From positions 620,001 through 684,000 of the forward strand of contig JAAOMT010000372.1 in NCBI GenBank assembly GCA_016748015.1: 64,000 nt of DNA, written 5' to 3'. This stretch comes from Geosiphon pyriformis uo1 (lineage: Eukaryota > Fungi > Glomeromycota). Made by a program: the position numbers and the translations under genes. Positions 41,462 through 57,110 of the stretch are shown piece by piece. The notes beneath the pieces were generated by a model. That model was not told the DNA's origin and made no database searches. It was given only the letters and a program-made list of their open reading frames with translations. The first letter of the stretch is position 1; every line of letters begins with the position of its first letter.

Positions 41462-42621
41462 TCGGATTGCTGATTCATCTTGATTCTTTTGTGCACAGAT
41501 TGATGTGTATGTGTGTATATGTATTGTATATATGTGATGTCAAATTTATATATGCCTGTAAATATTAAAAACTTTGGCAAGAATCTTCTCAACTTCTTGA
41601 TACCCAACGAAACAATGTTATCATTGTTGTTGCTTGTACAAAAAGTTTATAGTAGAGAGAAGTTTTTGTATACAAATCAAATGGTGCAAGAAAATCGTGT
41701 GATTGTATTTTTTGTGACCATTAATATTTGTTTTTAATAAAAACAAATATCAATAAATAAACCAATTTGATATTCGAGAATGTTTATTTTAAAAATTGTC
41801 GATGGTTTCAGTATTATATAATTATCAGGTTAATAAAAAAAACAAAAAATCTGCAATTGTAGTTTATTAATACAAAAACATTTGAAATATAGTTATAGAA
41901 ACTAAAATAACATGATAATATTAATATTTTGTATATAAAATATAAAAATAAACAAAAATCTTGAATAAGAATCAAAATTAGTCAAAATAATTAATTAAAT
42001 TAAAATAATAATAATAATTAATAAATGACAATATAATATAAAAATTATATAAACTTCAATGTAATAAAAAAATATAATAATATATAACAAATAATAACAA
42101 TAATATTATATTAATATATGTTTAATTATTAATTAATATTGAGTAAAATAACAATTAAAAATTACAAATTATTTATAGTAAAACAGCAAAATAACTTTAA
42201 ACTGCTGATAAACTACCAAAAATTTTTAAATAATTTTTTCATATTGTTATTTATTAATGAAAATTTTATTTTTACGTTATGTTTAAAGAAATAATTTAAA
42301 AATTATAATTAAGAATTTCAAATTAAATTATAAAATATATTTATAACTAATATTATATGGTGTTGTCTTGACGAAAGTCCCGGGTGGCTGGTCACGTGTT
42401 AAAAACGCATGATCCACGTCTATAGTAGCTAGAGTAGACCTCACTTAGTTAAAGCATTTAAAAAAATATTATGTGGGGCGTGCTGCAACAAAACTAAAAT
42501 TCGGATATTTCCTTTAACTCACTTTCATCTTAACATAGTTTTCTGTGGCGGCATAAAACGCTTGTGACTTAGAGAATTTTTTTTTCACCGAACGCGCATC
42601 AATTGTTTGTTTATCATCGAA

Positions 42622-45310
42622 ATGGAATATCATTTACCAGAGAACGCGAAACAATACCTACGCTACTATGGTAAGAGACTGTTTTGACCTGGCTAAAAAT
42701 ACCGTTATTCACTCACATGTTCTGGTATATAGACTACTGGAGCCGACCTCGAAACGAATGGAATCTGCAGACCTTCAATACTTACTTGGCCCAACACGGA
42801 ACTGTCGACAAAGCCAAAATTCACAACGCCTTTGAGAGAGAGATTACTGCACTCAAGAAATTGTTCGCGCGCGGACATCCCATCAGGATGCGTCTGAACG
42901 AACTCGTGGGGCAACTAAAGGTGAGATGTAAGATGGCGGTACAGATAATGGCGAGACGCTACGAGAGTCAGTGCAAAGTGTTTCCTTGTCGTTTAGGGTG
43001 CTTCCCTGGCGTTTTCTGCTTCAATGCAAGGTATTTCCTTGTCGTTTAGGGTGCGACCCTGGCGTAGCAAGCAGCTGAGCCTCCGGGCGTTTTGTCTTCC
43101 AAATTCACTCCCGAAATTTTTTAGGGGCGAAATTTTTCCTAGTAACAATCTCAATTTGCTTCTTAGACCCGGCGCGCTCAGCACGAATATGAAACGATAT
43201 CGATGAAGAACAAAATGTTAGAAAAAAAGATCGACTTTGCAAAGGTTTGTGCTTATCGATTTGTCGTATCTGTAATCGCGAGTAAAAAACTCATTTCTTC
43301 TGAACGTTTAAGAATTCTGTATCTCTAAGCGGATATCGTCGGATCAACGAACACTACGAGAATTTTCATGCGAAACTGTTGAATGTCAAACGTTCTACAA
43401 ACAAAGAGGATGATGAAAGTGATGAAGGCCAGGACGAGAACGGAGATGCTGAAGAAGATGAAGACAACAATCCTTTTCTAGTCCAATTAGAGGTCTGCTT
43501 TAAACCACGCTGCTTCCACTATTGTAATATGGTGCTTCATTGATTTTAGTTTTTTCTTATCGTCTGTACCTAGGGAAAAGAGCAGGAGGATGACAATTTC
43601 GTTGATGATGGGAACAAGCCGGAGCATGAGAAGGAGGATGCTCACCTGACTTGCAAAAGAAAATTGGAAGATGGTTCAATGTCGGCGTCCATAGAAGAAT
43701 TTACCAACACTTTCAGAGCCATGCTGAACGAGCGAAAATGGCGGCTTTCGACGGGCAAATTGGTTGAGGATGCCCTGTATGAGTTTGGATCAAAATGCAT
43801 GGAAGAGCAGTATGTGTCAAGCTTGACTTGATTTCTGATACTTCATTCCAATTTTTCACGTTACCCTGTTTTGCCATCGTATTAGCCTGTCTCATAGTTT
43901 CGTGCTAGACCCGGATGACATCTCCTATGCCAATGAAGGTATTTTTACAATGGCCGAGTTGAACGAGATCCGTGCACATAAGGAGCGTAACCTCCCTGAA
44001 ATGCCGCAAAACCTTTTGAATTACCTAATGACCTATGCAAAGGTATATGAGAATCCAAGCGACATGATATTATTACTGAATGTACTGTTGTCCTCATCTT
44101 ATACAACATGGTTCGTGCATAGAGCACAGTCCGAGAACTTCGGTGTGCTCTTCGGCAGCCTATTGGTCTCGTGGATGACAACTTTCTTCGTGAAATCTAT
44201 CATGACTTCGATTGGTTACAACTGGCAATGCACTCCCTGTGAGTAATGATTTTTGGTGTCCTCGACCTATACGGCATGCACAACTAATGCTAGATATCCG
44301 CTACTACCTCAAAGCGTGCGAGAGTATGAAATTGGCAGTCTGAAAGAAGACCACCATGAACAATGGTACAATCTTCATCTCTGGGGTCCAATCGTGGACC
44401 AATGCTTTGCTGATGTAATGAACATGGAGGCAGTCAGGTGAGTTATTAAGAATGTATTTTTTCATCCCTGAGAAATGATTTAACATTCGGAACTTTTGCC
44501 AAACGATCTATAAGAGGGGAATCCTGTAGTGTAGCATCAGGTCTACGAAAGAACGCGAATCGCACGGTGCCGGGAAAGCATATCTTGAAGAAATTGAAGA
44601 TCGGGCGGAAAGGAGACCTGGTACTGCGAACGACCGCGAATCTTGAGTTTGGGGGAGCCGAGGCGGGAAGATTCTACAAGTCTAAGTGCGGGACGAAGTG
44701 GATAACGGAGAGTGGGCTCAAACTTCCGAAAATGCTCAAGGACATGCTCTTACAACTGGCAAACGAAGTTGGCTGGTCGGTACATGTGTTGCGAGAGTTG
44801 AGAACGTTCGGGTTTATGCAGGGTGGTAAGAAAAAACTCAATGGTTAATGTTACTCCTCTTTTCCTCTTTTTTCTTTGGATCAACAGTAAGACTTACACC
44901 TTGTTCTCTTTGAGCCCGTCACCAGATGATCATTGAGCTAGACTGTCCAGAGGGGTACGTCTGTCGTATGCGCAGAGGGGAAACCTTCAAAGTTGCCAGT
45001 GATGCGATCACGCATATGAAAGAGACGTTGCCCCTCATGGCAGTTACATGGAAGGTCAAGGCAAGTGGATGGGCTCGTTGAACTTTTTAGTAAGCAAAAT
45101 GGCCGCTACTGTCTAATATTTGCTTGTCACTGATAGACCGCTGTGAAAGAATGCCTTGAAAGGGTGTTGACGCACATCAGTAACGACAGCTCTACGGAGG
45201 AAGTGTTCGAGTTGGTCAAACATGCTGGTTCAAGCCGTAAGGATGCGGAAAACATCATGCAAATTCATGGTTGTTTACAAACACCTCATAAACGTTCGAA
45301 GAAGCTCTAA
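42622..45310 (+). CDS. Multi-exon, GC-rich gene encoding a putative PD-(D/E)xK restriction-endonuclease-fold protein of a family common in Mucoromycota
   Basis: ATG at 42622, stop at 45308-45310. Motifs WRLSTGKLVEDAL, HSFVLDPDD, EQWYNLHLWGPIVD, RGESCSVAS.LRKN, GRKGDLVLR...EFGGAEAG, KLPKMLKDML, LDCPEGYVCR, C-terminal TPHKRSKK. Fold assignment is inference from motif spacing. Confidence 0.7.
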
Positions 45311-45399
45311 ATCTGAAGTATTGTTTGCATTGTATTTTTTTTCCTGTATCACCTTTTCGCTTGTCATTTTTTCTTGTGTCTTCTTACATCAAGTCCACA

Positions 45400-46190
45400 A
45401 TGGAACCCAAAAATTATAGTACTATTAGAAGTATTTTGAAAAGAGAACAAGGCGAAAAAATTGCTCTTACCAAAAACTATCTGAGAATATTTAGATAAGG
45501 GAATCATTGCCTATGAGATTTATCAAGAAAGGTTATCAAATGTGCATCGGAAGATTCAAAAGTCAAAGAAAAAAAGAGTGAAAAATTCCACGAGTATACA
45601 TATTATGGAGTATTTTTTAATACACAATACACTATGTAGAAGAAATTTAACAAAACCAAACAAACTGCATAAAATATAAATATGATGAATGACAAAAACT
45701 TAACTGAATATGAAAAGGCATTTTATATTTTAAAAGTTGGATGCAGTTGTGGTTGTTTTTTCAAAGTTTTCAAGAAAGCATTTGTTGAGATTTAAAACTT
45801 TTCAAGTGTTTTTTAAGCCTGAACAAATCATTTTTTTAATGATTTAACTTAAAATTATAAGTAATAAATTTATAAATATTAATTACCTTTTAAAAAAAAG
45901 CTTTTATTAATGAAAAAAATTATACTGTTGAAACTGTAATTTATTTTTTTGCCAGAAAACTTACTTGAATATGTTAAAGATTAATTGAGCTTATTTTAAA
46001 ATATAAAAAGTAATTTAATAAAAAGTAATTTTATATTATAATACTATAATAATATAAAATAAAACCAATATAAAGATGGCTATTATAATAAAAATTTATT
46101 CTTAAATTACATTAAAATTTACAACTTACTTAGTTTAATAAAAAGTATTAATTAAATTATTTAATAAATTATTTTTTATTTATAAAAATG
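45400..46190 (+). pseudogene. Degenerate N-terminal fragment of a Cys-motif DNA transposase-like protein (possibly Sola-type)
   Basis: Reads MEPKNYSTIRS...EYEKAFYILKVGCSCGC...FCQKTYLNMLKI with increasing stops and frameshifts. Family call is from recollection only. Confidence 0.4.
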
Positions 46191-47021
46191 GATGAATCTA
46201 GTTGTAACAATCTGTTACATAAAACAACCTCGAAAATAGCTTTAATTAAGATCGAAAATTTTATTAAATTTTAAAAAAATAATATGTAATAATAATGTGT
46301 ATTAATTATTTTTATTGGACAAATTAAAGTTGAATTATTAATTTTACTAGAAATAAATACAATGTTTAGTTATTACAAAGTAAGAAATAAACAAATAATT
46401 AACTAAATTTTACTTAATTTTAATATTTTGTACTATTGTGTCTTAAAAGATCATATTTACAACAAGTGTATTTTGTGTATAGTTTTTTTTTTTTAGCAGA
46501 CTTATAACATTTGGTTTTTGGGTGTTATTTACATTATAATACTAATAGATTTTCAACTTGCTCAAGCTTATTTTCTTTATTGGCATTATTAATTTAATTG
46601 TTCTTTAGGACTTGGTCTTAATTTTGAAATATAAGCACTACTTTTTTATGTTGGCCAATAAATTGTCTTAATTATATTATTATTTACTATAATTGTTATA
46701 TACAATAGTAAATTGAACAGTCTGTTATGTAAATTTTTACATTTTATCATATTTTTGTTTTTTTTGTATTACAAGACATAAAACATTAGTAATAATTTTA
46801 AATACAGTTAAAAAATTTGGAATTACTATTTTGTTAAAAGAATTTTTTGCAGTTTTTTGATTTGTAAAGCAAAAAGCTTTAGTAACTAAATTATTGTCTT
46901 TTTTTTATTAGTATACTATTATGAAAGTATTATTTAAATATAAAATTCCACGATTTTTGATTATAATATTACTTAAAAATAATAGTAATAAACAATATTA
47001 TGAGATATACTAAACAAATAT

Positions 47022-47838
47022 TGTTATTCATAAAAAGTAGAAATTATAATAATAAGTAAAATAACTAATTAGAAATAAGCATAATAAAAGAAAAAATTTC
47101 AGAATTTCTCTTAAGAAATTACAAAATTTTAGAATTTCTCTCAAAAAATTGCAGAATTTCAAGGAATCTTGTATAACATAAATTATATATATATAGTAAA
47201 AGTATTAAAAGCAAAAAAAGTAATTCCAAAAAAATTTAATAAAATAGATAAAATTTATTAAAGTTCAAAACAACAATACTCTTTTCTTTAAAAAATAGTT
47301 TTTTATAACTTAAAATATAATTATTTTCATATTAATAAAATTATCTATTATTATCCTATCTATGTTTTTATTACTTAATTAAAGAAATATTAATTTATTT
47401 CATTCTATCAATACTTTATGTTGATAAAATTCAATACTTAATTATATTAAACCAATAGCTCTTAATTATGACTATTGATAGAATACTAATTTCTTATTTT
47501 TTTATTTTTTTATTATTTTTTTTTGTTTTGTTTCTTTGTTATTTACTAATTAAATTAAAAAAATTAAGTACTGAATATTTAATATCAAGAATAGCTTGAT
47601 AAAAGACCTAAAAACAAAAGTAAAAATTTAAGAATAACTTAACAAAAGAATATAACTGCCAAAATAAACCAGCCATTATATTAAAAAAAAATTCACAGAA
47701 GAAACTATCAATTAAGTCTCTGTTTATTATATAAAAAACTTAATCAAAACCTTCAAAAATTACCATTATTTTCAGCTATTAAGTACCAAGTTACAGGTTT
47801 GTTATTTGTTCTAATATTCCAAATAATTACTTATAACA
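47022..47838 (+). mobile_element. Solo LTR, family A
   Basis: Reverse complement of LTR A, TGTTATT...ATAACA. Flanks ATAT/GCAT are compatible with a GCAT TSD mutated by two transitions. Confidence 0.82.
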
Positions 47839-49724
47839 GCATAAACAAAAGTAAGAAACAGAATCAATAATTATAATAAAATGTGAATGTTTGCTGTTTT
47901 TTAGTTATAAATTTGTGATTTTTTATACTTTTTTAATGTTTTTTTCATCAATTTTAGCAACCATTAATTTCAATAAAATTTGTTTTATGTCATACAAATT
48001 TTTAATAAAATTATCTATTATATTAGGACTAAAATTTTAAATATCAAAATGTTGTTAAATAAATAATTTAAAAAAGTATATTAGGAAATAAATTTTTTTA
48101 TCTTATCATAAACATTAATATTTAATAATAATTAACTTACAATAAAGTATAAACATTGTGTTATTTTTAAATGTTTTATAGATAAAATATGAGACATAAG
48201 ATATTAAGTTATTTGTTTGTTAACTTCAGAAAAGAGATTATAGCCAACTAATATGATTTCTATACAAGATAAAAATGTATAATATTTAAAAAACAATTCT
48301 ATTCTGTCTTATTTTCAAGTTTTGTGTTTATTATATTAACAAAATTACATAAATTGTCATTTGCTGAAAGTATATATTTAATAATATTGTTAAACCTTTT
48401 AATATAAGAAATAGTTTGGGTTTTTACAGTAAATATTTTTGATATAAATACACAAATTCATGTTTGTTAGCTGAAATAAAAAGTTTTCATTAAGTAATCT
48501 TTAATATTAATATATGTTTCAATAAGTTGTAATTATCATTTATAGAAATTTTTTTCACATAAATTATTGTAATATAGAAAAAAATTATGAACAAAGCTTT
48601 TATATTGATTATAAAATTTTGATTTAAGATTTTTTAATAAGTTTTTATTAATGTAAAAAATACAATAAATTTAGTAAGTTATTTTATATATTTGAGCAAT
48701 TGCTGTATCTGCTATAAAATTAACATTAGTAATAAACATTAATAGTTCTGTTATTGTTGCTTTTTTATATATTCTAGAATTTATTTATATGATTCAGCAG
48801 TTTTATTTAATACAAAGACCTATGTGATAAAATAAGATCTTGTGTTATTGTTTATAATAAAAAAAAGAAAAAATAACATCTAATAATAGTTGGTTTTTGT
48901 TGTATTGTTATTTAAAACAACATTATAGTACTCTAACCAAAAAACAACTTGTGCAGAAGACATTCAAAATACACAAGTAAGCCAATTTTTATTAATTTCA
49001 CACTTTATAATTCATTTATAATTATTTGATTTGTAATTTATAAGAGTTGTCAACAAGTAGAATGTATTGTATTTTTCATTGTTATAAACTTTAAATCTTT
49101 GTATTGTATTTGTAAGATTACAATTAAAAATAGATGTTATTGAAAATTTTACTTTTAATAATTTTTTTTAAGTAGTAATTAATAGATTTGCATATTTTAT
49201 AAAAAATCAGATCTTTTAAAAAATATTATTTGAAATTTTTCAATATATTAAAGCATATTTTCTAATATTAAAATATAATAAATAATTGTATGTATTATTA
49301 AAAGTAATAAAAGTTATTTTACATGAGTTTTTGGTACAGTTGACATTGATATATTAACTACATCTTTAATGTTTTAATTTAGTGTTCTGATAATTTTGAA
49401 TGATAATTTTTTTTTGGTTCATATTAATTACTAAATTTGTATTTAAAAATATAATGTTTAATATTGCCATTTAGATATTATTCTAATTTTTTTTAGATAA
49501 CTCCAAATCTTTGTTGTTTATTATAAGTTTTTATAATTATATTAATATTTTTTTATGTTTTAAAAACATAATTAGTACAAAGTTTTATAGTTAAATAAAT
49601 GTAAAAAAATCTGATACTAAATATAACTGAAATTATAATCAAAAATTTTATCTCTATTTATAGATATTTGGTTACTTAATTAGAATAAGTTTTTATTAAT
49701 GTAATTTTATAGTTAATTGGCCAG

Positions 49725-50749
49725 TATTATCTGAGTAAAAAAACTGATCCAAAGTTATAAAAAAATGTAACCAGAACATGATATAATACAGAATAATGTG
49801 CAATAATATTGGATAATACATTATAACTTAAAATAGTGCAGGATAATACAGAATAACACTAGATAATATGTTATAACATAGGATAACTAGTAATAACATA
49901 AAAGAATGAAACAATAACAAAAATGACAAAAGCAATAGTTAGCAATAACAAAACAATCAGAAGCAATCCTGTAAAATCAAAAGAATATATAAAAGCAAGT
50001 AGTTGTAGAAAGTAGAAATAAACAGATAGATAAATATGAACTATTAGACAAAAATTAATTCCTGCTCTTTACCTATTCTCTTAAATTACATTAAATAAAC
50101 TCAAAATAAACTCAAAATAAACTTATCAACAGAAATTCAAAAAAAAACATGAATACATGTTTTTTAAACTTCTATGTTTTAATTGAATTAAATTTTGTTT
50201 CATACTCTCATTTTAGGCCCAATGCTCTTAGCATAAATGCCTTAAATCATTAATAACTTGGACCAATCACTCTTGATCATGGTGATTGATGATATTAATT
50301 TCTCTTTTTTTTCGTTTTTTTCTTTTTTTTTCTTTTTTTTCTTTTTTTCTTTATTTTCTTTGATAGAACAGCAACATAGAAAAATCAACTGTCTGAGAAT
50401 AGACTTTGTGATAGCCTGGTAAAAGAAAGAAGCTTTCTCTAAGTTTTTGGATATTAATATTATCTTGATAGCTTATCAAAAAAGTGAAAAAACAATGCCA
50501 GATTCTAATAACTGTGCTTGTTAGCTTAGAAAAGAAAGCTTATCTTTATAAAAAGTTGTAATTAGCAAGAACCAAAACTCTGTGTCTTATAACCAAAAAA
50601 CTTAATAAATAAATTCACAATCAGTAAATAAGACTTTCAGAGACTGATAATCAAAATTAAGCCAGCAGAATTACATGAAAAACACATCACCAATAATTAA
50701 GAGCACCAAATGTTATCATTTCTCTATCCTACTAAGTTTATTTATAATA
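49725..50749 (+). mobile_element. Solo LTR related to family B
   Basis: Colinear with the reverse complement of LTR B. Termini TATTATC...ATAATA (mutated TG...CA). TSD CCAG (49721-49724 / 50750-50753). Confidence 0.85.
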
Positions 50750-51235
50750 CCAGTTTTATATTAAAAATAGGTTCTAAATTAGGATAAAAATAACTTTAGT
50801 TTTTTAACACATAGTTTTTTACTAAACATATATATATACTCTTCTTTAAAAACAAACTGGTTATTTTATTTTATTTTGTATTTATATTAAAATATTAATC
50901 TTAATATAATACATAATATATAGAGTATTATATTTAAAATTGTCAATATACTATTAATCACAATACTAATTAATACATTTAAGTAAATATTATCTAAAAT
51001 AATTTGAAGAGTCAGACTTTGTGTAATCTGTTGCTTTTAACACTTTAAAATTTATAGCTTATATTTGATACATAAATTTCTATGATTACTTTTATAATAT
51101 ATAAGTTTTCTTGTGATTTAAGCACTGTTTGAAACAAAAAAAACTTCTTGTTGTGCGTCAAATTTAAAAACCATGTAATATAATATATGTGATTTATTTT
51201 TAATTAATTATTACATAATTTAAAACAGATTAAGA

Positions 51236-51273
51236 CGTCGATCACTGTGCCATATATGGCACAGTGATCGACG
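51236..51273. repeat. Perfect 38-bp palindrome
   Basis: CGTCGATCACTGTGCCATA|TATGGCACAGTGATCGACG equals its own reverse complement. Confidence 0.97.
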
Positions 51274-51319
51274 AAACAAATAAACTCACGTGGCACAATA
51301 TCAAATCACGTGATTTTCT

Positions 51320-52378
51320 GAGGTTGTTACAAATCTATTAATTCTAAAAAAATTACAGAATTACTTTGTTTTTATTAACAAAAAAAATTATCCTTACTTT
51401 TACTTAAAAATTGTGAATCCCTAAAAATCTTAGACTGCAGAAAATTTTCTTGTTTTATTGATTGTTGCAGATAAACCAAATCTAAAAACTATTTCTTGAA
51501 AAGAAAATAATTTCCAAGAGTTAATAATAGAAGATTGCTCTAATTTAGAACAATTAGATTTTAGTAATCAAAGTATTTATTTTGAAGAAAGTGGTTATAA
51601 AATCGAATGTGAATTGTTAATTGATACTATTAACAATAGCAATCTGAAAAATGTTTTTTATTCCAAGTATAGTAAAAATATTCCTGATTACAAACCTTTT
51701 CCAAACTAGAAAAAGTAAAGATTGGTAAAAGAATTATAATAGGTAATGAACAAGCTTACTTTGTTGAAAGGATTGATATTCTCGGAATTCGCAATACTGA
51801 AAAAATAGAAACAATACTAGCTAATCCTAATAATTACTCTTGAGAAGACTTGATGAAACTAGAGAAAAAAGATTTATACGAAGTATTAGTCGAATTAAGA
51901 TTAAAACTAATCAACTTAGAGAGAAAGAAACTCAGAGAAGAATTAACAAAAGAAAAAACCAAAGCTGATTTACCACTGGTTGAAAAAAAAATACCAATTC
52001 CTCTCTTAGAAAAAGACAATTTACCAATAGAAGATAATCCGAAAATACCAACACCCCAAGAAGAACCAGTTCCGGAACCTGATTATAAAAAAGTATACTC
52101 CGAATTACAAGCAGAAATAGAAAATCTGAAAAAACAGCTACCAAAAAAGGAAGAAATAGCAGTAATATGAAATAAAATTACTAGTTCTGCCCTTAGTCAA
52201 GAAAAAAAGCAATAATTAGATAATTTACTAAATGCTAAAGAAAGAGGTATTAGTGAAAAGTAATAAGCCAACTAATTATTTTCCTTATCTCTTGGGAATA
52301 GGAATAATGATAATATCAGTAATGTTATTGGTTTACTTAGTAGGAAAAACAAGAAGAGAAATCAACTTGAAAAAATAA
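51320..52378 (+). pseudogene. Frameshifted LRR + coiled-coil + C-terminal TM protein, readable in genetic code 4; probable Mollicutes-related endobacterium (Ca. Moeniiplasma) origin
   Basis: LRR units KLSLLLLKNCESLKILDC and DKPNLKTISwKENNFQELIIEDCSNLEQLDFSN. In-frame TGA at 51497, 51841 and 52168 all read through sensibly as Trp. C-terminal anchor NKPTNYFPYLLGIGIMIISVMLLVYLVGKTRR. No introns needed. Confidence 0.72.
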
Positions 52379-54121
52379 TTATGGTTAATGCTCAAACATG
52401 ATTATAAACAATAAGTTTCCTAACCAAAGAGATTGAGAAATAATTAACAAAAAAATTGTAATTACTTTGGAAGATTATTTCCAGACCTTTTCCATATACC
52501 ACTGAGATTTTTTTGGTGAGCTTTTATAGTTTTCACTCCCACATGATTACGTTCACATTCCTTTCTATTCTCCCGAATATTTCATTCATTATATTTAACC
52601 AATTGATAAAAAAGAAAAAAAAAACACAGGAGAAATAATTAATCGCTAGCATAGAAGTTAAAAGTAAATAGTTCTTATATATGAAAGAATTAAAAAATAA
52701 GGATTTTGATCAGGTTTACTTTGTCTGGTTTTGTTTCAGCACGCCTCATATAATAATATACATCTAAATAAATGTTTGAATTAAATATTTCTTAAAATTA
52801 TTTTTTATTTATATAAAATTTTTCATGATTTAATTAATTTTTGTAATTAATATTATATATATTTTGATTATTAGAATTATCGGGTGGTCAAAATAATTAG
52901 AATCATATATTTTTGGAGTGAGATCTTGCTTTACGTTCTCTTGTTATTCTTCTTCTTCTTCTTCATTTCATATTCTTCCATTAATATGTTTTCTTTCCTC
53001 TTTTTTTTACTAGTCTGATTCTTATAATATTCATATAACATTCGAAAAGCGAATCCATTTCTATAGCTCTTATGTGCCATTTCGGGGAAAACTCCCCTCC
53101 TGTATTCTTTTTGATACTATATCCTTCTTGCCAGAAGAAAACAATTCAATCTAGATAAACTTTACTAATTTCAAAGTGGTCAAAGAATCCCAATTTTTAT
53201 AATTGTTCTTAAGAAATGGCCAGTCGGGTTTATTTGATCAAAAAAAATTTCTTTAGTAGTCGTTCTAAAAGGAAGATCTTACCTAAAAAAGTGATTATGC
53301 AAGAATGATTGTCATATTTAAGAAAATCTCCGCATTGTAAATCGGAGATATCCGTTCTAGTCTGTAACTTCTAATAATAAGACCAGCAAAAAATGGGAAG
53401 AACAATGGATAAAGTTAAAATAATTTATGTTTGTAAGAACATATTATTTCAGAGAGACTATCAAGGGAAAAAAGTGTTTGATAAAATTCGTTGAACAAAT
53501 GTTAAAGTGGTAAATTTCGAAACTCAAAATGTCGACCTGACTTTTCGGGTGGAAGCCACTCTAAAATTTGGTTTAGAAATATATATATGGTAAATTAAAC
53601 ATATTAATTGTATCCATATGCTTTACCCATTTTTTAAATTTTGTTAATCACTAGAATAGTAATCTTAGTTTCGGCTAGTTGACCCTCATTCAAAATGATA
53701 AACAGGCGAAGTTCTTGCGGCTAACGCTAAATTCTTCACCCTATCTCTGGATTTTATTTAAGGAATATTTGTTCAAGTGGTGGCCAAGTAATTAGCTGAG
53801 CAACCAATATCATAGGACTATCAAAAACAGCCCCTTTTTTTTTTAAATCTCCAAGCCTTGTGATACTCGCAAAATAAATCTGACACTTTTCTCCATCCTC
53901 ACAGCCTTCTTGGCGTTTGAATTAGAAATTTTTTGGGTCGCCTTTTCATAAAATAAAGTATAAAAAAAGCCACTAAACAAAATAAAAGACGCGCAAAAAT
54001 TTTAACACTTTATATAAATAGCATTATTGGCTTTAACCATTAAATAGAAAAAAGAAATCAATTCTACATTGATTGGTCGCGTTTTTGCTTTTTTTTAAAA
54101 CACGTGTTAGTTTTTTTCACA

Positions 54122-57110
54122 ATGACTTACTATCAAGGAGGGGGAGGAAGACCAGGTAGTCCAAGGGACCAAGAGCAGCAGCAGCAACAGCAACAACCTT
54201 ACCCAACATATCCAGCGTATACACCACAAATCTCAGACCCATATGCAGAAAATCAACCACCTCAAATATATCCACCTACACAACCCGGAATTTATCCACC
54301 AGTTCCTCACTCAGATTCCTTTGTTGACCTTAGTGCACAACAACCTTTATTACCACAACCTGGCCAGTCTCCTGTTTATCCTACTACTGGTCCTGGTGTT
54401 TCTTTTGAACTCGAAGATAAACCTCCATTACATTATGGTCAAGCACCAGCGCGTCAACCTCGTCGATATAAGACCACAAAACGGGTCGAATTGTTTCAAG
54501 GTAACTTGGTCCTCGATGTCCCAGTCCCCTCGAAATTATTAGAATTATGTCCAAGAAAAGACGAGAGGGAATTCACTCACATGCGCTATACTGCTGCCAC
54601 TTGTGACCCAAATGACTTTGGGCGTGACCGTTATACTCTACGTCAAAAGATTTATGAACCAGCACGAGCAACCGAATTATTTATTGTCTTAACCATGTAC
54701 AATGTAAGTCAATTGACTTTTCTAGTCATGAAGTTGATTGGCCGTTCTATGGCGATCATCAATTCAAATTGCTACTAAAAATCACGTGATTCCCTTCTAA
54801 TCCCTCTTGCATCATTATTTTCATCATCAGGAAGATGAAATTCTGTTTGCACGTACTTTCCACGGTGTCGTTAAAAATATTTCACATCTTTGTTCGCGTG
54901 ATCGTTCTCGAGTTTGGAGCAAAGAAGGATGGAAAAAAGTAACTGTATGTATTGTTTCGGATGGTCGAACAAAGATCAATCAACGTACTTTATCTTATCT
55001 TGCGGCTATCGGTGTGTATCAAGATGGCGTCGCCAAAAATAAAGTCAATGGAAAAGATGTTACAGCACATATTTACGAGTACACCACTCAAGTTTCAATC
55101 GATCCTGACATGAAGTTCAAGGGTGCTGATCGTGGCATTGTTCCAATTCAGGTTCTCTTCTGTCTCAAAGAAAAGAATGCAAAAAAAATCAATTCACATC
55201 GTTGGTTTTTTAATGCATTTGGATCTATTCTCACTCCAAATGTTTGTATCCTTCTTGATGTCGGCACAAAACCGGGAGGTACATCAATTTATCATTTGTG
55301 GAAAGCTTTCGATATAAACTCAAATGTGGCTGGTGCTTGTGGTGAAATTGTGGCAATGAAAGGTACCGCTGGTGTCAATTTATTGAACCCAATTGTCGCT
55401 GCTCAAAACTTCGAGTACAAGATGTCAAATATTTTGGATAAACCACTCGAATCTGTATTTGGTTATATCACTGTGTTACCGGGTGCTTTCTCCGCTTATC
55501 GTTATTTTGCTCTCGGAAACGATGAAAATGGAAACGGCCCTTTGAAGTCTTATTTCATGGGTGAATCGCAACACGGTGCAGATGCTGATATTTTCACGGC
55601 TAATATGTATCTCGCCGAAGATCGTATTCTTTGTTTTGAATTAGTCGCCAAGCGAAAGAGTGCATGGGTGTTACATTATGTAAAATCAGCATATGCTGAA
55701 ACTGATGTTCCTGATCAAGTTCCTGAATTGATTTCTCAACGAAGGCGTTGGTTGAATGGTTCATTCTTTGCTGGTGTTTATGCAATCTGGAACATGTCCA
55801 GCATATGGAGAAGTGATCACAGTCTCATAAGAAAAATTTTATTGAACGTAGAAATGTATTATCAAGCCTATAATTTGTTATTTTCGTGGTTTGGAATAGT
55901 AAGTATTCAATAATATTCAATACTAGAAATTACATATCAGAATTTATTAAATATTTCTCGTGCCGTTTTCTTTTCAGGGGAACTTTTATTTGACATTCTA
56001 CATCTTAGGAAATTCTCTGACAGACCAGGACGTAGTTAAGGGTCTCTGGAGTACCACGACTGGCGAAATTATATTTGCTATACTACGATATATATATTTG
56101 ACCTTGCTGATAACTCAATTTATTCTTGCTATGGGCAATCGACCTCAAGGGTATTTCATTATATTTAAGATATTTGTTAATCGATTTCAAAATCTTAATC
56201 AACCTTTCCAATTAAAATATAAATCCTGCTTTCCTTTGACCTATCAGATCAAAATGGGCCTATATTGTTTCAATCGTGTTCTTTGCCTTTCTTATGGGTT
56301 ACATGTTGTTTGCGGCCGGTTGGCTTACTGCCAAAGGTATCGATTTCGCCTTGGAAACTAACAAGAATAAATTAACCGGAGCAAACGTTTCCACCGCAGC
56401 TGCAATTTTTAACGACCCTACTTTCCGCAACGTCATCTTGTCGCTGGCTTCCACCTATGGTCTTTACTTTGTCGCAAGCTTCCTATTCTTTGAACCCTGG
56501 CACATGTTCAGCAGTCTGATACAATATCTTTTTTTGGTTCCATTCTACATCAATATTTTGAATGTTTATGCTTTTTGTAATGTTCACGATGTCAGGTATG
56601 TTAAATATGTGATTTTAAAGAACTTTTTTGACAATAGCGTTTTTAATTTCGAAAAAAAATTAAGTAATCCTTCCTTTTCATAGCTGGGGTACGAAAGGAG
56701 ATAACGCTGTAAAGCAAGATCTCGGTTCCGTAACTACAGGACCTGGAAAGAGCACTGTAGAAGTCGAAATTCCTGTCGAGCAAAAAGACATCAATGCTGC
56801 TTACCAAGAGGCATGTGCTGAACTTGCAAAACCATTTGAGCCCCAAGAGGAACATCGTGATTCAAGCACCAAACAAGAAGATTATTATAAATCCTTCCGT
56901 ACCCGTGTTGTATTATGCTGGATTTTGTCAAACGCAGCATTGGTTGCTGGTATCACAAATTCGAATGTCTCAAGTTTGAACAATGTTTTGGCGGCGGACC
57001 AAAGAAGCAATGTTTATATGGCCTTTGTACTATGGTCCGTGGCAGGATTGGCAGCATTTCGATTCGTAGGCAGCTGTACATATCTGTTATTCAGACTTTT
57101 CACTGGTTAA
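54122..57110 (+). CDS. CHS: Chitin synthase, division 1 (class I/II-like, no myosin motor or cytochrome b5 domain); exons ~54122-54703, 54831-55898, 55978-56150, 56248-56595, 56684-57110
   Basis: Motifs [94 protein letters not shown]. Canonical GT-AG introns. Confidence 0.97.

What the first reader, a model, noticed from the sequence alone, without database searches (positions are those of the whole stretch)
51317..52750. Endobacterium-to-fungus DNA transfer: Mollicutes-type LRR gene in genetic code 4 embedded in the nuclear scaffold
Seen: intronless, Lys/Glu/Asn-rich coding sequence with LRR units (LKNCESLKILDC; IIEDCSNLEQLDFSN), a coiled coil and a C-terminal TNYFPYLLGIGI...LVGKTRR membrane anchor. 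Three in-frame TGA codons (51497, 51841, 52168) sit mid-domain and read as Trp (TISwKEN, NYSwEDL, AVIwNKI). A convergent - strand remnant (~52460-52600) also reads through a TGA (KYNEwNIRENRKEC). CpGs are retained here, so TGG>TGA hypermutation is an unlikely source of these TGAs. A few frameshifts show decay after transfer. Established: AM fungi host Mollicutes-related endobacteria (Ca. Moeniiplasma) that use TGA=Trp and are rich in LRR proteins. Inference: a nuclear insertion of endosymbiont DNA, dead on arrival because of the code difference, lying ~1.4 kb upstream of a chitin synthase.
Basis: partly seen in the sequence, partly recalled or inferred. Interest (0 to 1): 0.82.

Follow-up and report, generated by a model that had tools for sequence, protein, structure and literature searches.

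The report
Dead endobacterial LRR gene on transposon
This stretch is a broken, silent copy of a surface-protein gene from the fungus's Mycoplasma-like endobacteria, sitting in the fungal chromosome as cargo of a jumping element, but its three TGA codons cannot be shown to have spelled tryptophan.

Summary
The coding-like track is real. Window 51352-52378 is colinear with the C-terminal ~370 residues of intact, code-4 "internalin-related" LRR membrane proteins of Mollicutes-related endobacteria (MRE). These include a named protein of DhMRE (tblastn E 8e-38 to 2e-24). The copy lacks its 5' part and carries three frameshifts, three TGA and one TAA. No RNA-like contig covers it. Its DNA depth equals that of the neighbouring chitin synthase, and fungal repeats flank it. 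It is therefore nuclear and not a chimera.

The claim "TGA = Trp" is not upheld.
- TGA 51497 sits at the invariant cysteine of the LRR.
- TGA 51841 aligns with Trp in one MRE homologue and Leu in three.
- TGA 52168 aligns with Arg/Lys.

Code-4 ancestry is only suggested, by an excess of TGA among in-frame stops and by the absence of TGG.

The insertion is not naked. It is cargo near the right end of a ~10.3-kb TIR transposon (42470-52752). Full copies of that transposon's transposase stay open only if TGA is read as sense. At least five other loci carry the same cargo. The fungal copies fall into two MRE paralogue clades.

This scan has already reported the same code-4 transposon family on other DNA of this genome. 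Verdict: partly supported, and a new variant of a known kind.

The parts
42470..42494 (.). Left terminal inverted repeat of the host transposon copy
   Evidence: It is the reverse complement of the right-end motif. It is 93% identical over 30 nt to the end of element L048. It is the only other copy of the motif in the window.
45384..45560 (+). Start of the transposon's small first ORF (MEPKNY...), decayed
   Evidence: There are at least 30 copies in the genome at 78-88% identity, usually about 220 nt inside a left TIR. A homologue lies in endobacterial contig L034, upstream of PemK and the LRR gene.
45700..46176 (+). N-terminal remnant of the transposon's ~610-aa transposase
   Evidence: tblastn of the L050 transposase matches residues 15-184. 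The core of the full copies matches Pfam DUF7869, E 4e-17.
46200..50748 (.). Unrecognisable AT-rich interior of the element
   Evidence: GC is 19% and CpG observed/expected is 0.10. There is no similarity to the transposase, to full elements or to the N-terminal part of the LRR gene.
50749..51351 (.). Unrelated multi-copy repeat abutting the gene fragment, with a 36-nt perfect palindrome at 51237-51272
   Evidence: It is 80-88% identical to copies on C621 and C434. The palindrome occurs at 7 places with up to 3 mismatches.
51352..52378 (+). 5'-truncated pseudogene of an endobacterial internalin-like LRR membrane protein. It holds the last LRR units (to ~51570), a family-specific domain (~51571-51960), a coiled-coil/Pro-rich linker (~51960-52260) and a membrane anchor (52262-52375).
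   Evidence: It is colinear by tblastn with P0001, P0006 (DhMRE) and P0007. phmmer with 51500-51706 against 1.84 billion proteins gave P0001 as the only homologous hit (E 1.9e-8); the four weaker hits include low-complexity repeat proteins. Depth is 82 and no RNA-like contig covers it.
51497..51499 (+). In-frame TGA at the invariant cysteine of the LRR unit
   Evidence: Cys is present in all four endobacterial homologues and in fungal copies C702, C788 and C411.
51841..51843 (+). In-frame TGA at a position that is Trp in one homologue and Leu in the others
   Evidence: P0007 has Trp (codon TGG). P0001, P0006 and the DhMRE paralogue on L053 have Leu in the anchored alignment, and by eye fungal copy C430 does too.
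52168..52170 (+). In-frame TGA at a position that is Arg/Lys in homologues
   Evidence: P0007 has Arg. Reading the translations by eye, P0006 has Lys, fungal copy C386 has Arg or Lys, and C653 has a TAA or TAG stop. A further in-frame TAA lies at 52213-52215.
52379..52687 (.). Tail that travels with the LRR cargo. Its origin is unknown.
   Evidence: It is 89%, 84% and 69% identical to C430, C343 and C386. It is absent from transposon copies without the LRR cargo. It has no match in the endobacterial loci or in Pfam.
52688..52752 (.). Subterminal sequence and right terminal inverted repeat of the transposon
   Evidence: The motif has 65 hits at up to 3 mismatches in the genome and 0 in the reversed control. 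Inverted pairs lie 0.4-8.6 kb apart.

Best explanation
Window 51352-52378 is a dead, 5'-truncated copy of a gene for an internalin-like, cysteine-ladder LRR surface protein with a C-terminal membrane anchor. This family lives intact, in several paralogues, in the Mollicutes-related endobacteria (MRE) of Glomeromycotina fungi. The copy lies in the fungal nuclear chromosome. It is not a naked insertion. It is cargo between the transposase and the right terminal repeat of a ~10.3-kb TIR transposon copy (42470-52752).

The most likely history is inferred, not shown:
1. The LRR gene was linked to this element in, or on the way from, an endobacterium that reads TGA as Trp.
2. The element entered nuclear DNA, where its cargo cannot be expressed.
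3. The LRR-bearing subfamily was copied to at least five other loci.
4. All copies then decayed through frameshifts, nonsense codons, deletions, insertion of other repeats and AT-biased mutation.

Today the stretch does nothing. It has no open frame, and no RNA-like contig covers it in the one run that behaves as RNA.

The three TGA codons are best read as changes away from Cys, from Leu or Trp, and from Arg/Lys. They may have arisen while TGA was still a sense codon, but they do not mark conserved tryptophans.
For: Homology:
- phmmer of 51500-51706 against 1.84 billion proteins gave P0001 as the only homologous hit.
- P0001 lies on a 23-kb bacterial contig with 52 in-frame TGA against 9 TGG and no other internal stops.
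- P0001's C-terminal half finds P0006, 'Putative Internalin-related protein [endosymbiont DhMRE of Dentiscutata heterogama]', and P0007, which lies on a bacterial contig.
- The window is colinear with all three through the LRR end, the family-specific domain, the linker and the anchor.

Bacterial character of the family:
- The best NCBIfam match is Listeria InlJ.
- All other database relatives listed are proteins with bacterial-type LRR domains; those that carry a name are bacterial, and no fungal name appears.
- DhMRE holds at least two paralogues with the specific domain.

Nuclear and silent: unitigs chain across both junctions at depth 82, against 80 in the flank. Run X2 splices the chitin synthase intron, so it behaves as RNA, and it gives no cover on 51288-52575.

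All fungal relatives are broken.

Transposon context:
- Inverted ends lie at 42470-42494 and 52713-52752.
- The small ORF and the transposase N-terminus lie inside in the canonical order.
- The same cargo, tail and TIR recur on C430, C386, C702, C653 and C646.
- The transposase is open over ~550 codons only with TGA as sense. TGA and TGG alternate at 5 conserved Trp columns.

Hints of code-4 ancestry for the cargo:
- After removing stops caused by frameshifts, 6 of 8 in-frame stops in the three mildly decayed copies are TGA. The expected share is 13-33%.
- There is no TGG in 735 codons.
- CpG observed/expected equals that of live MRE genes.
Against: - No TGA in this copy sits at a conserved Trp. 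The conserved Trp positions of the family (PDW, NYW) are TAC and TTT here.
- The DUF7869-type transposase was not found in DhMRE or in four other genomes of its GTDB family. The terminal repeat is absent from the endobacterial loci I hold. The element has therefore not been seen whole in a bacterium by me.
- The endobacteria of this fungus itself were not available.
- The left end of the element matches over only ~30 nt. The target-site duplication is not resolved, and 4.5 kb of the interior is unrecognisable.
- Published work reads LRR genes shared by MRE and Glomeromycotina as fungus-to-MRE transfers (PMC10507103).
- The DNA run that supports the junctions may be the one the assembly was made from.
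Confidence: 0.78

Rival explanations
1. Direct, transposon-independent insertion of a piece of endobacterial chromosome into the nucleus. The terminal repeat at 52713-52752 and the transposon parts upstream would then be neighbours by chance or later arrivals.
For: The family-specific homology to MRE genes holds whatever the vehicle was. The 309-nt tail after the gene is not part of cargo-free transposon copies and could be co-transferred bacterial flank. The fungal copies fall into two MRE paralogue clades, which fits repeated independent arrivals.
Against: The same order recurs at several loci: LRR cargo, tail and terminal repeat on C430, C386, C653 and C646, with transposase sequence upstream on C430 and C386, and LRR cargo directly followed by the terminal repeat on C702. 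Independent naked insertions would not reproduce that order. In C386 a nearly full-length LRR gene follows the transposase.
Confidence: 0.12
2. Reverse direction. The LRR gene family is native to the fungus or to its transposons, and the endobacteria acquired it from their hosts. The window then holds an ordinary decayed fungal paralogue.
For: The literature interprets LRR and kinase genes shared by MRE and Glomeromycotina as host-to-endobacterium transfers (PMC10507103). MRE genomes hold many host-derived genes.
Against: No intact fungal member was found. All 10 matches in this genome are short fragments, and 9 of them carry stops. No fungal protein appeared among 1.84 billion representatives or in the word search. 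The LRR type is the bacterial InlJ cysteine-ladder type. There is no TGG codon in 735 fungal codons, where a standard-code gene should have about 8. The accompanying transposase itself needs TGA as sense.
Confidence: 0.07
3. Assembly artefact. An endobacterial contig or read was wrongly joined into a nuclear scaffold.
For: Several Glomeromycotina assemblies are known to be contaminated with MRE contigs (PMC10507103, PMC11423566).
Against: Depth over the fragment is 82, equal to the flanking single-copy gene at 80. Unitigs overlap in a chain from 50949 to beyond 55500. The fragment is broken by frameshifts and bounded by fungal multi-copy repeats. Paralogous copies lie in megabase-scale contigs.
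Confidence: 0.02
4. Nuclear copy of mitochondrial DNA. Fungal mitochondria also read TGA as Trp.
For: Only the shared genetic code.
Against: All homologues lie on bacterial contigs next to bacterial genes: SodFe, HU, TruB, a pseudouridine synthase and PemK. There is no mitochondrial gene similarity, and no tRNA in 44.5-53 kb.
Confidence: 0.01

Closest known systems
'Putative Internalin-related protein' of endosymbiont DhMRE of Dentiscutata heterogama (P0006, record LN828718.1), with its relatives P0001 and P0007
   Same: The order of parts is the same over the last ~370 residues: final cysteine-ladder LRR units, a family-specific domain (...ILGIRNTEKIE.ILANP...), a Pro/Glu-rich coiled linker, and a PTNY(W/F)P... 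membrane anchor. Amino-acid identity is 40-48% in the specific domain.
   Different: The window copy lacks the N-terminal ~260 residues and is broken by three frameshifts and four stops. It sits in a fungal chromosome inside a transposon and is not transcribed. The bacterial genes are intact and use TGA for most Trp codons.
Listeria class 1 internalin InlJ (NCBIfam NF033187), the cysteine-ladder LRR type
   Same: The repeat pattern is LxxLxCxxN... with a conserved cysteine. It is the best curated-family match of the intact endobacterial relatives (E 1e-26 and 2e-15).
   Different: The scores are far below the family cut-off (93 and 57 bits against 1700). This is a resemblance of repeat type only. 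The C-terminal domain and the plain membrane anchor are not those of InlJ, which from my own knowledge is wall-anchored by LPXTG.
Endosymbiont-to-host nuclear DNA transfers. Examples are Wolbachia fragments in insect and nematode chromosomes (own knowledge) and MRE-to-Diversispora epigaea gene transfers (Sun et al. 2019, as summarised in PMC8227670).
   Same: DNA of a heritable intracellular bacterium ends up in the host's chromosome. Most such pieces are non-functional.
   Different: Here the piece rides inside a multi-copy TIR transposon whose own transposase carries the symbiont's genetic code. The cargo has been copied to several loci. The D. epigaea cases were reported as functional defence genes, not as dead code-4 cargo.
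The code-4 cut-and-paste transposon family that this scan reported elsewhere in the same genome (notes s1-495586, s1-505793, s1-556550 and others)
   Same: It has the same kind of element: terminal repeats, a transposase readable only with TGA as sense, and bacterial passenger genes near one end with standard-code segments at the other. I re-derived these features here from L047-L050.
   Different: This copy carries a different passenger, the LRR surface-protein gene. That passenger has a named homologue in a sequenced endobacterium. I could not confirm those notes' statement that complete relatives of the transposon sit in endobacterial chromosomes.

Membership tests
MRE internalin-related LRR membrane protein family (P0001/P0006/P0007) | Cysteine-ladder LRR units (LxxLxC...) | tested here: met
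   Units LKILDC, LKTIS[TGA] and LEQLDF align with the last repeats of all homologues. Pfam itself finds nothing in the short pieces.
MRE internalin-related LRR membrane protein family (P0001/P0006/P0007) | Family-specific post-LRR domain | tested here: met
   51571-51960 aligns at 40-48% identity. Combined tblastn E-values are 8e-38, 6e-30 and 2e-24. This domain occurs only in MRE proteins and in the fungal fragments.
MRE internalin-related LRR membrane protein family (P0001/P0006/P0007) | C-terminal hydrophobic anchor preceded by PTNY(W/F)P | tested here: met
   SNKPTNYFPYLLGIGIMIISVMLLVYLVGKTRR aligns with NNPPTNYWPYLLVLGTAIILTAVIISYLLSRRKK of P0001.
MRE internalin-related LRR membrane protein family (P0001/P0006/P0007) | Complete open reading frame with the N-terminal LRR half | tested here: not met
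   The copy starts at about residue 260 of 631. It has three frameshifts, three TGA and one TAA. No N-terminal part lies upstream. It is a pseudogene of the family, not a working member.
Genetic code 4 reading of this copy (TGA = Trp) | In-frame TGA at positions that are Trp in homologues | tested here: not met
   51497 aligns with an invariant Cys. 51841 aligns with Trp in 1 of 4 MRE homologues and Leu in 3. 52168 aligns with Arg/Lys. The conserved Trp positions are TAC and TTT here.
Genetic code 4 reading of this copy (TGA = Trp) | Excess of TGA over TAA/TAG among in-frame stops and lack of TGG | tested here: inconclusive
   In this copy 3 of 4 in-frame stops are TGA, and 6 of 8 in the three mildly decayed copies. 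The expected share is 13-33%, giving P of roughly 0.004-0.03. There are 0 TGG in 735 codons. The numbers are small.
Nuclear insertion of endosymbiont DNA | Physically continuous with host chromosomal DNA at host single-copy depth | tested here: met
   Overlapping unitigs run from 50949 to beyond 55500. Depth is 82 against 80. The run may be the assembly's own data, so this is not independent.
Nuclear insertion of endosymbiont DNA | Donor lineage identified in the host's own endobacteria | not testable with these tools
   No genome of this fungus's own endobacteria was at hand. The closest relatives come from another host's MRE and from metagenomes.
TIR (cut-and-paste) DNA transposon cargo | Terminal inverted repeats bracketing the cargo | tested here: met
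   The ends lie at 42470-42494 and 52713-52752 in inverted orientation, and no other copy of the motif lies between them. The motif has 65 genomic hits against 0 in the control.
TIR (cut-and-paste) DNA transposon cargo | Element-encoded transposase inside | tested here: met
   An N-terminal remnant lies at 45700-46176. Full copies hold a ~610-aa ORF whose core matches Pfam DUF7869. No catalytic activity is shown.
TIR (cut-and-paste) DNA transposon cargo | Target-site duplication | tested here: inconclusive
   TA on both sides is possible, and 6 of 8 ends inspected fit it. However, the similarity of the ends runs into ATA, so the exact terminus is not fixed.

The most novel reading that the evidence does not exclude
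A transposon family shuttles between the Mycoplasma-like endobacteria and the nucleus of their fungal host. Its transposase is kept open under the bacterial code (TGA = Trp), yet dozens of copies and miniature derivatives lie in nuclear DNA. It carries endobacterial surface-protein genes such as this LRR gene into the chromosome, repeatedly and from different paralogues. That would make it a dedicated vehicle for symbiont-to-host DNA traffic. It would also reverse the published direction of transfer for LRR genes shared by MRE and Glomeromycotina.
Probability: 0.3. Interest if true: 0.9.

Novelty: new variant of a known kind. Interest (0 to 1): 0.62.

Why it matters
[quoted passage not shown] LRR genes are the standard example of that reading.

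This locus gives a clean, alignable case pointing the other way:
- The bacterial genes are intact, use code 4 and belong to a bacterial internalin type.
- Every fungal copy is dead.

The locus also ties the transfer to a concrete vehicle: a TIR transposon whose transposase itself needs TGA as a sense codon. If the vehicle reading holds, it offers a testable mechanism for how symbiont DNA reaches a host nucleus. It would also explain why fungal assemblies show scattered hits that look like MRE contamination.

For annotation, the practical point is that this stretch is not a gene and should not be modelled as one.

Tried and rejected
- Pfam on the five stop-free pieces gave nothing usable.
- The word-index protein search with the 69-aa piece found no candidate.
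- I looked for an intron to bridge the break near 51700. No GT..AG pair restores the frame, and the paralogue on C702 shows an indel instead.
- I considered a mitochondrial origin. No tRNA was found, and all homologues lie in bacterial context.
- I tested whether stops at conserved Trp positions of the very decayed copy on C692 (TAA three times, TTA once) prove a TGA ancestry. The G-to-A loss there is about 0.6, so the likelihood ratio is only about 5. I set this aside as weak.
- I searched for the N-terminal part of the gene, and for more transposase, in 46.0-51.4 kb. Nothing was found.
- I searched for the tail (52379-52687) in endobacterial loci and in cargo-free transposon copies. Nothing was found.
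- I searched for the terminal repeat in 11 endobacterial loci, allowing up to 9 mismatches. Nothing was found.
- I searched for the DUF7869 transposase piece in DhMRE and in its four family genomes. It was not found with this query.
- A DDE_3 scan of the fungal genome gave 147 hits. None lies at the LRR-bearing loci, so the DDE_3 gene next to P0006 in DhMRE is not the vehicle here.

Method notes:
- No tool was given a protein read through a stop. Pieces were searched apart.
- In my own scripts, stops in the LRR pseudogene were shown as * or X.
- Only the intact bacterial genes and the transposase copies were translated with table 4, for alignment.
Full report
**What is in the sequence.**

Between 51352 and 52378 the plus strand carries a coding-like track. 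It jumps frame three times, near 51437, 51691 and 52252.

In order it reads:
- two to three LRR units of the LxxLxC type;
- a non-repetitive domain;
- a Lys/Glu/Pro-rich coiled stretch;
- a hydrophobic tail, SNKPTNYFPYLLGIGIMIISVMLLVYLVGKTRR.

No TGG occurs in the track.

Positions 50749-51351 belong to an unrelated repeat found on C621, C434 and elsewhere. That repeat includes a 36-nt perfect palindrome present at 7 places.

A chitin synthase starts about 1.35 kb to the right.

**Outside relatives.**

Pfam and the word-index search were blank for the pieces.

A full phmmer scan of 1.84 billion representatives with 51500-51706 gave P0001 (631 aa, E 1.9e-8) as the only homologous hit. The four weaker hits include low-complexity repeat proteins.

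P0001 lies on a 23-kb soil-metagenome contig with bacterial genes (Fe-SOD, HU, TruB). That contig has 29.5% GC, 52 in-frame TGA against 9 TGG, and no other internal stop. It is therefore a code-4 Mollicutes-type genome.

Searching with P0001's C-terminal half found two further relatives:
- P0006, which NCBI names 'Putative Internalin-related protein [endosymbiont DhMRE of Dentiscutata heterogama]'.
- P0007, on bacterial contigs next to a pseudouridine synthase and a PemK toxin gene.

The window is colinear with the last ~370 residues of all three, at E 8e-38, 6e-30 and 2e-24.

The intact proteins score best against the Listeria InlJ cysteine-ladder internalin model. The remaining database relatives all carry bacterial-type LRR domains, the named ones are bacterial, and none has a fungal name. 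DhMRE holds at least two paralogues with the specific domain and several more with the C-terminal anchor.

**Nuclear, single copy, silent.**

Unitigs of DNA run X1 overlap in a chain across 50949-51189, 51161-51265, 51251-52395, 52367-52597 and 52570 to beyond 55500. Depth over the fragment is 82, against 80.3 over the chitin synthase.

Run X2 of the same sample contains a contig that skips a 127-nt GT..AG intron of the chitin synthase, so it behaves as RNA. It gives no cover on 51288-52575.

X1 may be the assembly's own data. This shows internal consistency, not independent proof.

**The TGA codons.**

Aligned to four endobacterial homologues and to the fungal paralogues:
- 51497 is the invariant ladder cysteine. 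Cys is also kept in fungal copies C702, C788 and C411.
- 51841 is Trp (codon TGG) in P0007 but Leu in P0001, P0006 and the second DhMRE paralogue. By eye, fungal copy C430 also has Leu there.
- 52168 is Arg in P0007. By eye it is Lys in P0006, Arg or Lys in C386, and a TAA or TAG stop in C653.
- The conserved tryptophans of the family (PDW, NYW) are TAC and TTT here.

The reading 'TISwKEN, NYSwEDL, AVIwNKI' as Trp is therefore not supported.

What remains is statistical:
- Stops that are mere consequences of the frameshifts were removed by hand from the counts. After that, 3 of 4 in-frame stops in this copy are TGA, and 6 of 8 in the three mildly decayed copies.
- A neutral model on these codons expects a TGA share of 13-33%. 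My binomial estimate is P of about 0.004-0.03.
- No TGG occurs in 735 codons. A standard-code gene would have about 8, and the live MRE genes would predict about 3.
- CpG observed/expected is 0.45. That is the same as the live MRE genes (0.32-0.53), and far from both the hypermutated interior of the element (0.10) and the fungal gene next door (0.90).

These facts fit an ancestry in a TGA-sense genome. They do not prove it.

**The fragment is transposon cargo.**

Parts of the stretch recur on other contigs.

The last 40 bases (52713-52752) are a motif with 65 genomic hits at up to 3 mismatches and none in the reversed control. Inverted pairs lie 0.4 to 8.6 kb apart. Its only other copy in the window is inverted, at 42470-42494.

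Inside this pair, in the order seen in full elements, lie:
- the start of a small ORF (MEPKNY..., 45384-45560). It has at least 30 genomic copies, usually about 220 nt from a left end.
- the N-terminus of a ~610-aa transposase (45700-46176).

Full copies (L047, L049, L050) keep that transposase open over about 550 codons only if TGA is sense. TGA and TGG alternate at five conserved Trp columns, and there is no TAG or TAA. Its core matches Pfam DUF7869.

The same arrangement recurs on other contigs. LRR cargo, tail and terminal repeat are on C430, C386, C653 and C646, with transposase sequence upstream on C430 and C386. On C702 the LRR fragment is followed directly by the terminal repeat. C386 still holds the gene from about residue 105 onward.

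This agrees with earlier notes of this scan on other DNA of the same genome. Those notes also name the organism as Geosiphon pyriformis. I did not verify that name.

**Direction and number of transfers.**

All 10 matches to P0001 in this genome are short fragments, and 9 of them carry stops.

In a tree of the LRR part, one split with 97/94 support separates two groups:
- fungal copy C692 with P0001 and P0006;
- fungal copies C788, C386 and C411 with P0007 and the second DhMRE paralogue.

The fungal copies are therefore not one clade. At least two paralogues crossed between the partners.

I read the direction as endobacterium to nucleus, because:
- the bacterial genes are intact;
- the repeat type is bacterial;
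- the hints of code-4 ancestry point that way;
- the transposase needs code 4.

The published view that shared LRR genes moved from fungus to MRE (PMC10507103) is the main rival. MRE-to-fungus transfers have been reported for other genes (Sun et al. 2019, via PMC8227670).

**Open points.**

- I did not find the transposase in DhMRE or in four related genomes. I did not find the terminal repeat in any endobacterial locus.
- An endobacterial contig does carry a homologue of the element's small ORF. It lies directly upstream of PemK and the LRR gene P0007.
- The element's exact termini and target duplication are unresolved.
- 46.2-50.7 kb is unreadable.

Noticed in passing
L034:6050-6330 (endobacterial contig) and window 45384-45560: The transposon's small first ORF (MEPKNY...EQGEKIA...YEIYQQ) has a homologue in an endobacterial contig, at 74% and 65% amino-acid identity and with a frameshift. 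It sits exactly where an antitoxin would sit, upstream of a PemK toxin gene, and about 0.9 kb upstream of the LRR gene P0007.
   Followed up: partly
L048:3944-5251 (minus strand; G000 C669, inside a 5.2-kb element): Another cargo ORF of the same transposon family is open for 436 codons with 15 in-frame TGA, no TGG and no other stop.
   Followed up: no
window 51237-51272 and six other genomic places: A 36-nt perfect palindrome (consensus GTCGATCACTGCGCCATATATGGCGCAGTGATCGAC) lies inside a ~600-bp repeat. The window copy has CpG changed to TpG symmetrically on both arms.
   Followed up: partly
window 46200-50700: The interior of the element has 19% GC and CpG observed/expected of 0.10. The LRR cargo 1 kb away keeps 0.45. 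Decay has been very uneven within one element. Another LRR copy (C692, L024) is down to 12.7% GC, with about 60% of first-position G changed to A.
   Followed up: partly
window 42500-45380: A 2.9-kb segment with 42-48% GC lies between the left terminal repeat and the small ORF. It has standard-code ORFs with no Pfam match. Element L047 has a different GC-rich segment in the same position. Cargo seems to vary at both ends of the family.
   Followed up: no
L036:1174-3658 (DhMRE, next to P0006): The DhMRE LRR gene lies beside a Peptidase_C48 (SUMO protease-like) gene, a protein kinase gene, a DDE_3 transposase and an IS1595 transposase. This is a cluster of eukaryote-like and mobile genes.
   Followed up: no
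window 54703-54831: A 127-nt GT..AG intron of the chitin synthase is confirmed by a spliced contig of run X2, which is labelled 'DNA?' but behaves as RNA.
   Followed up: no
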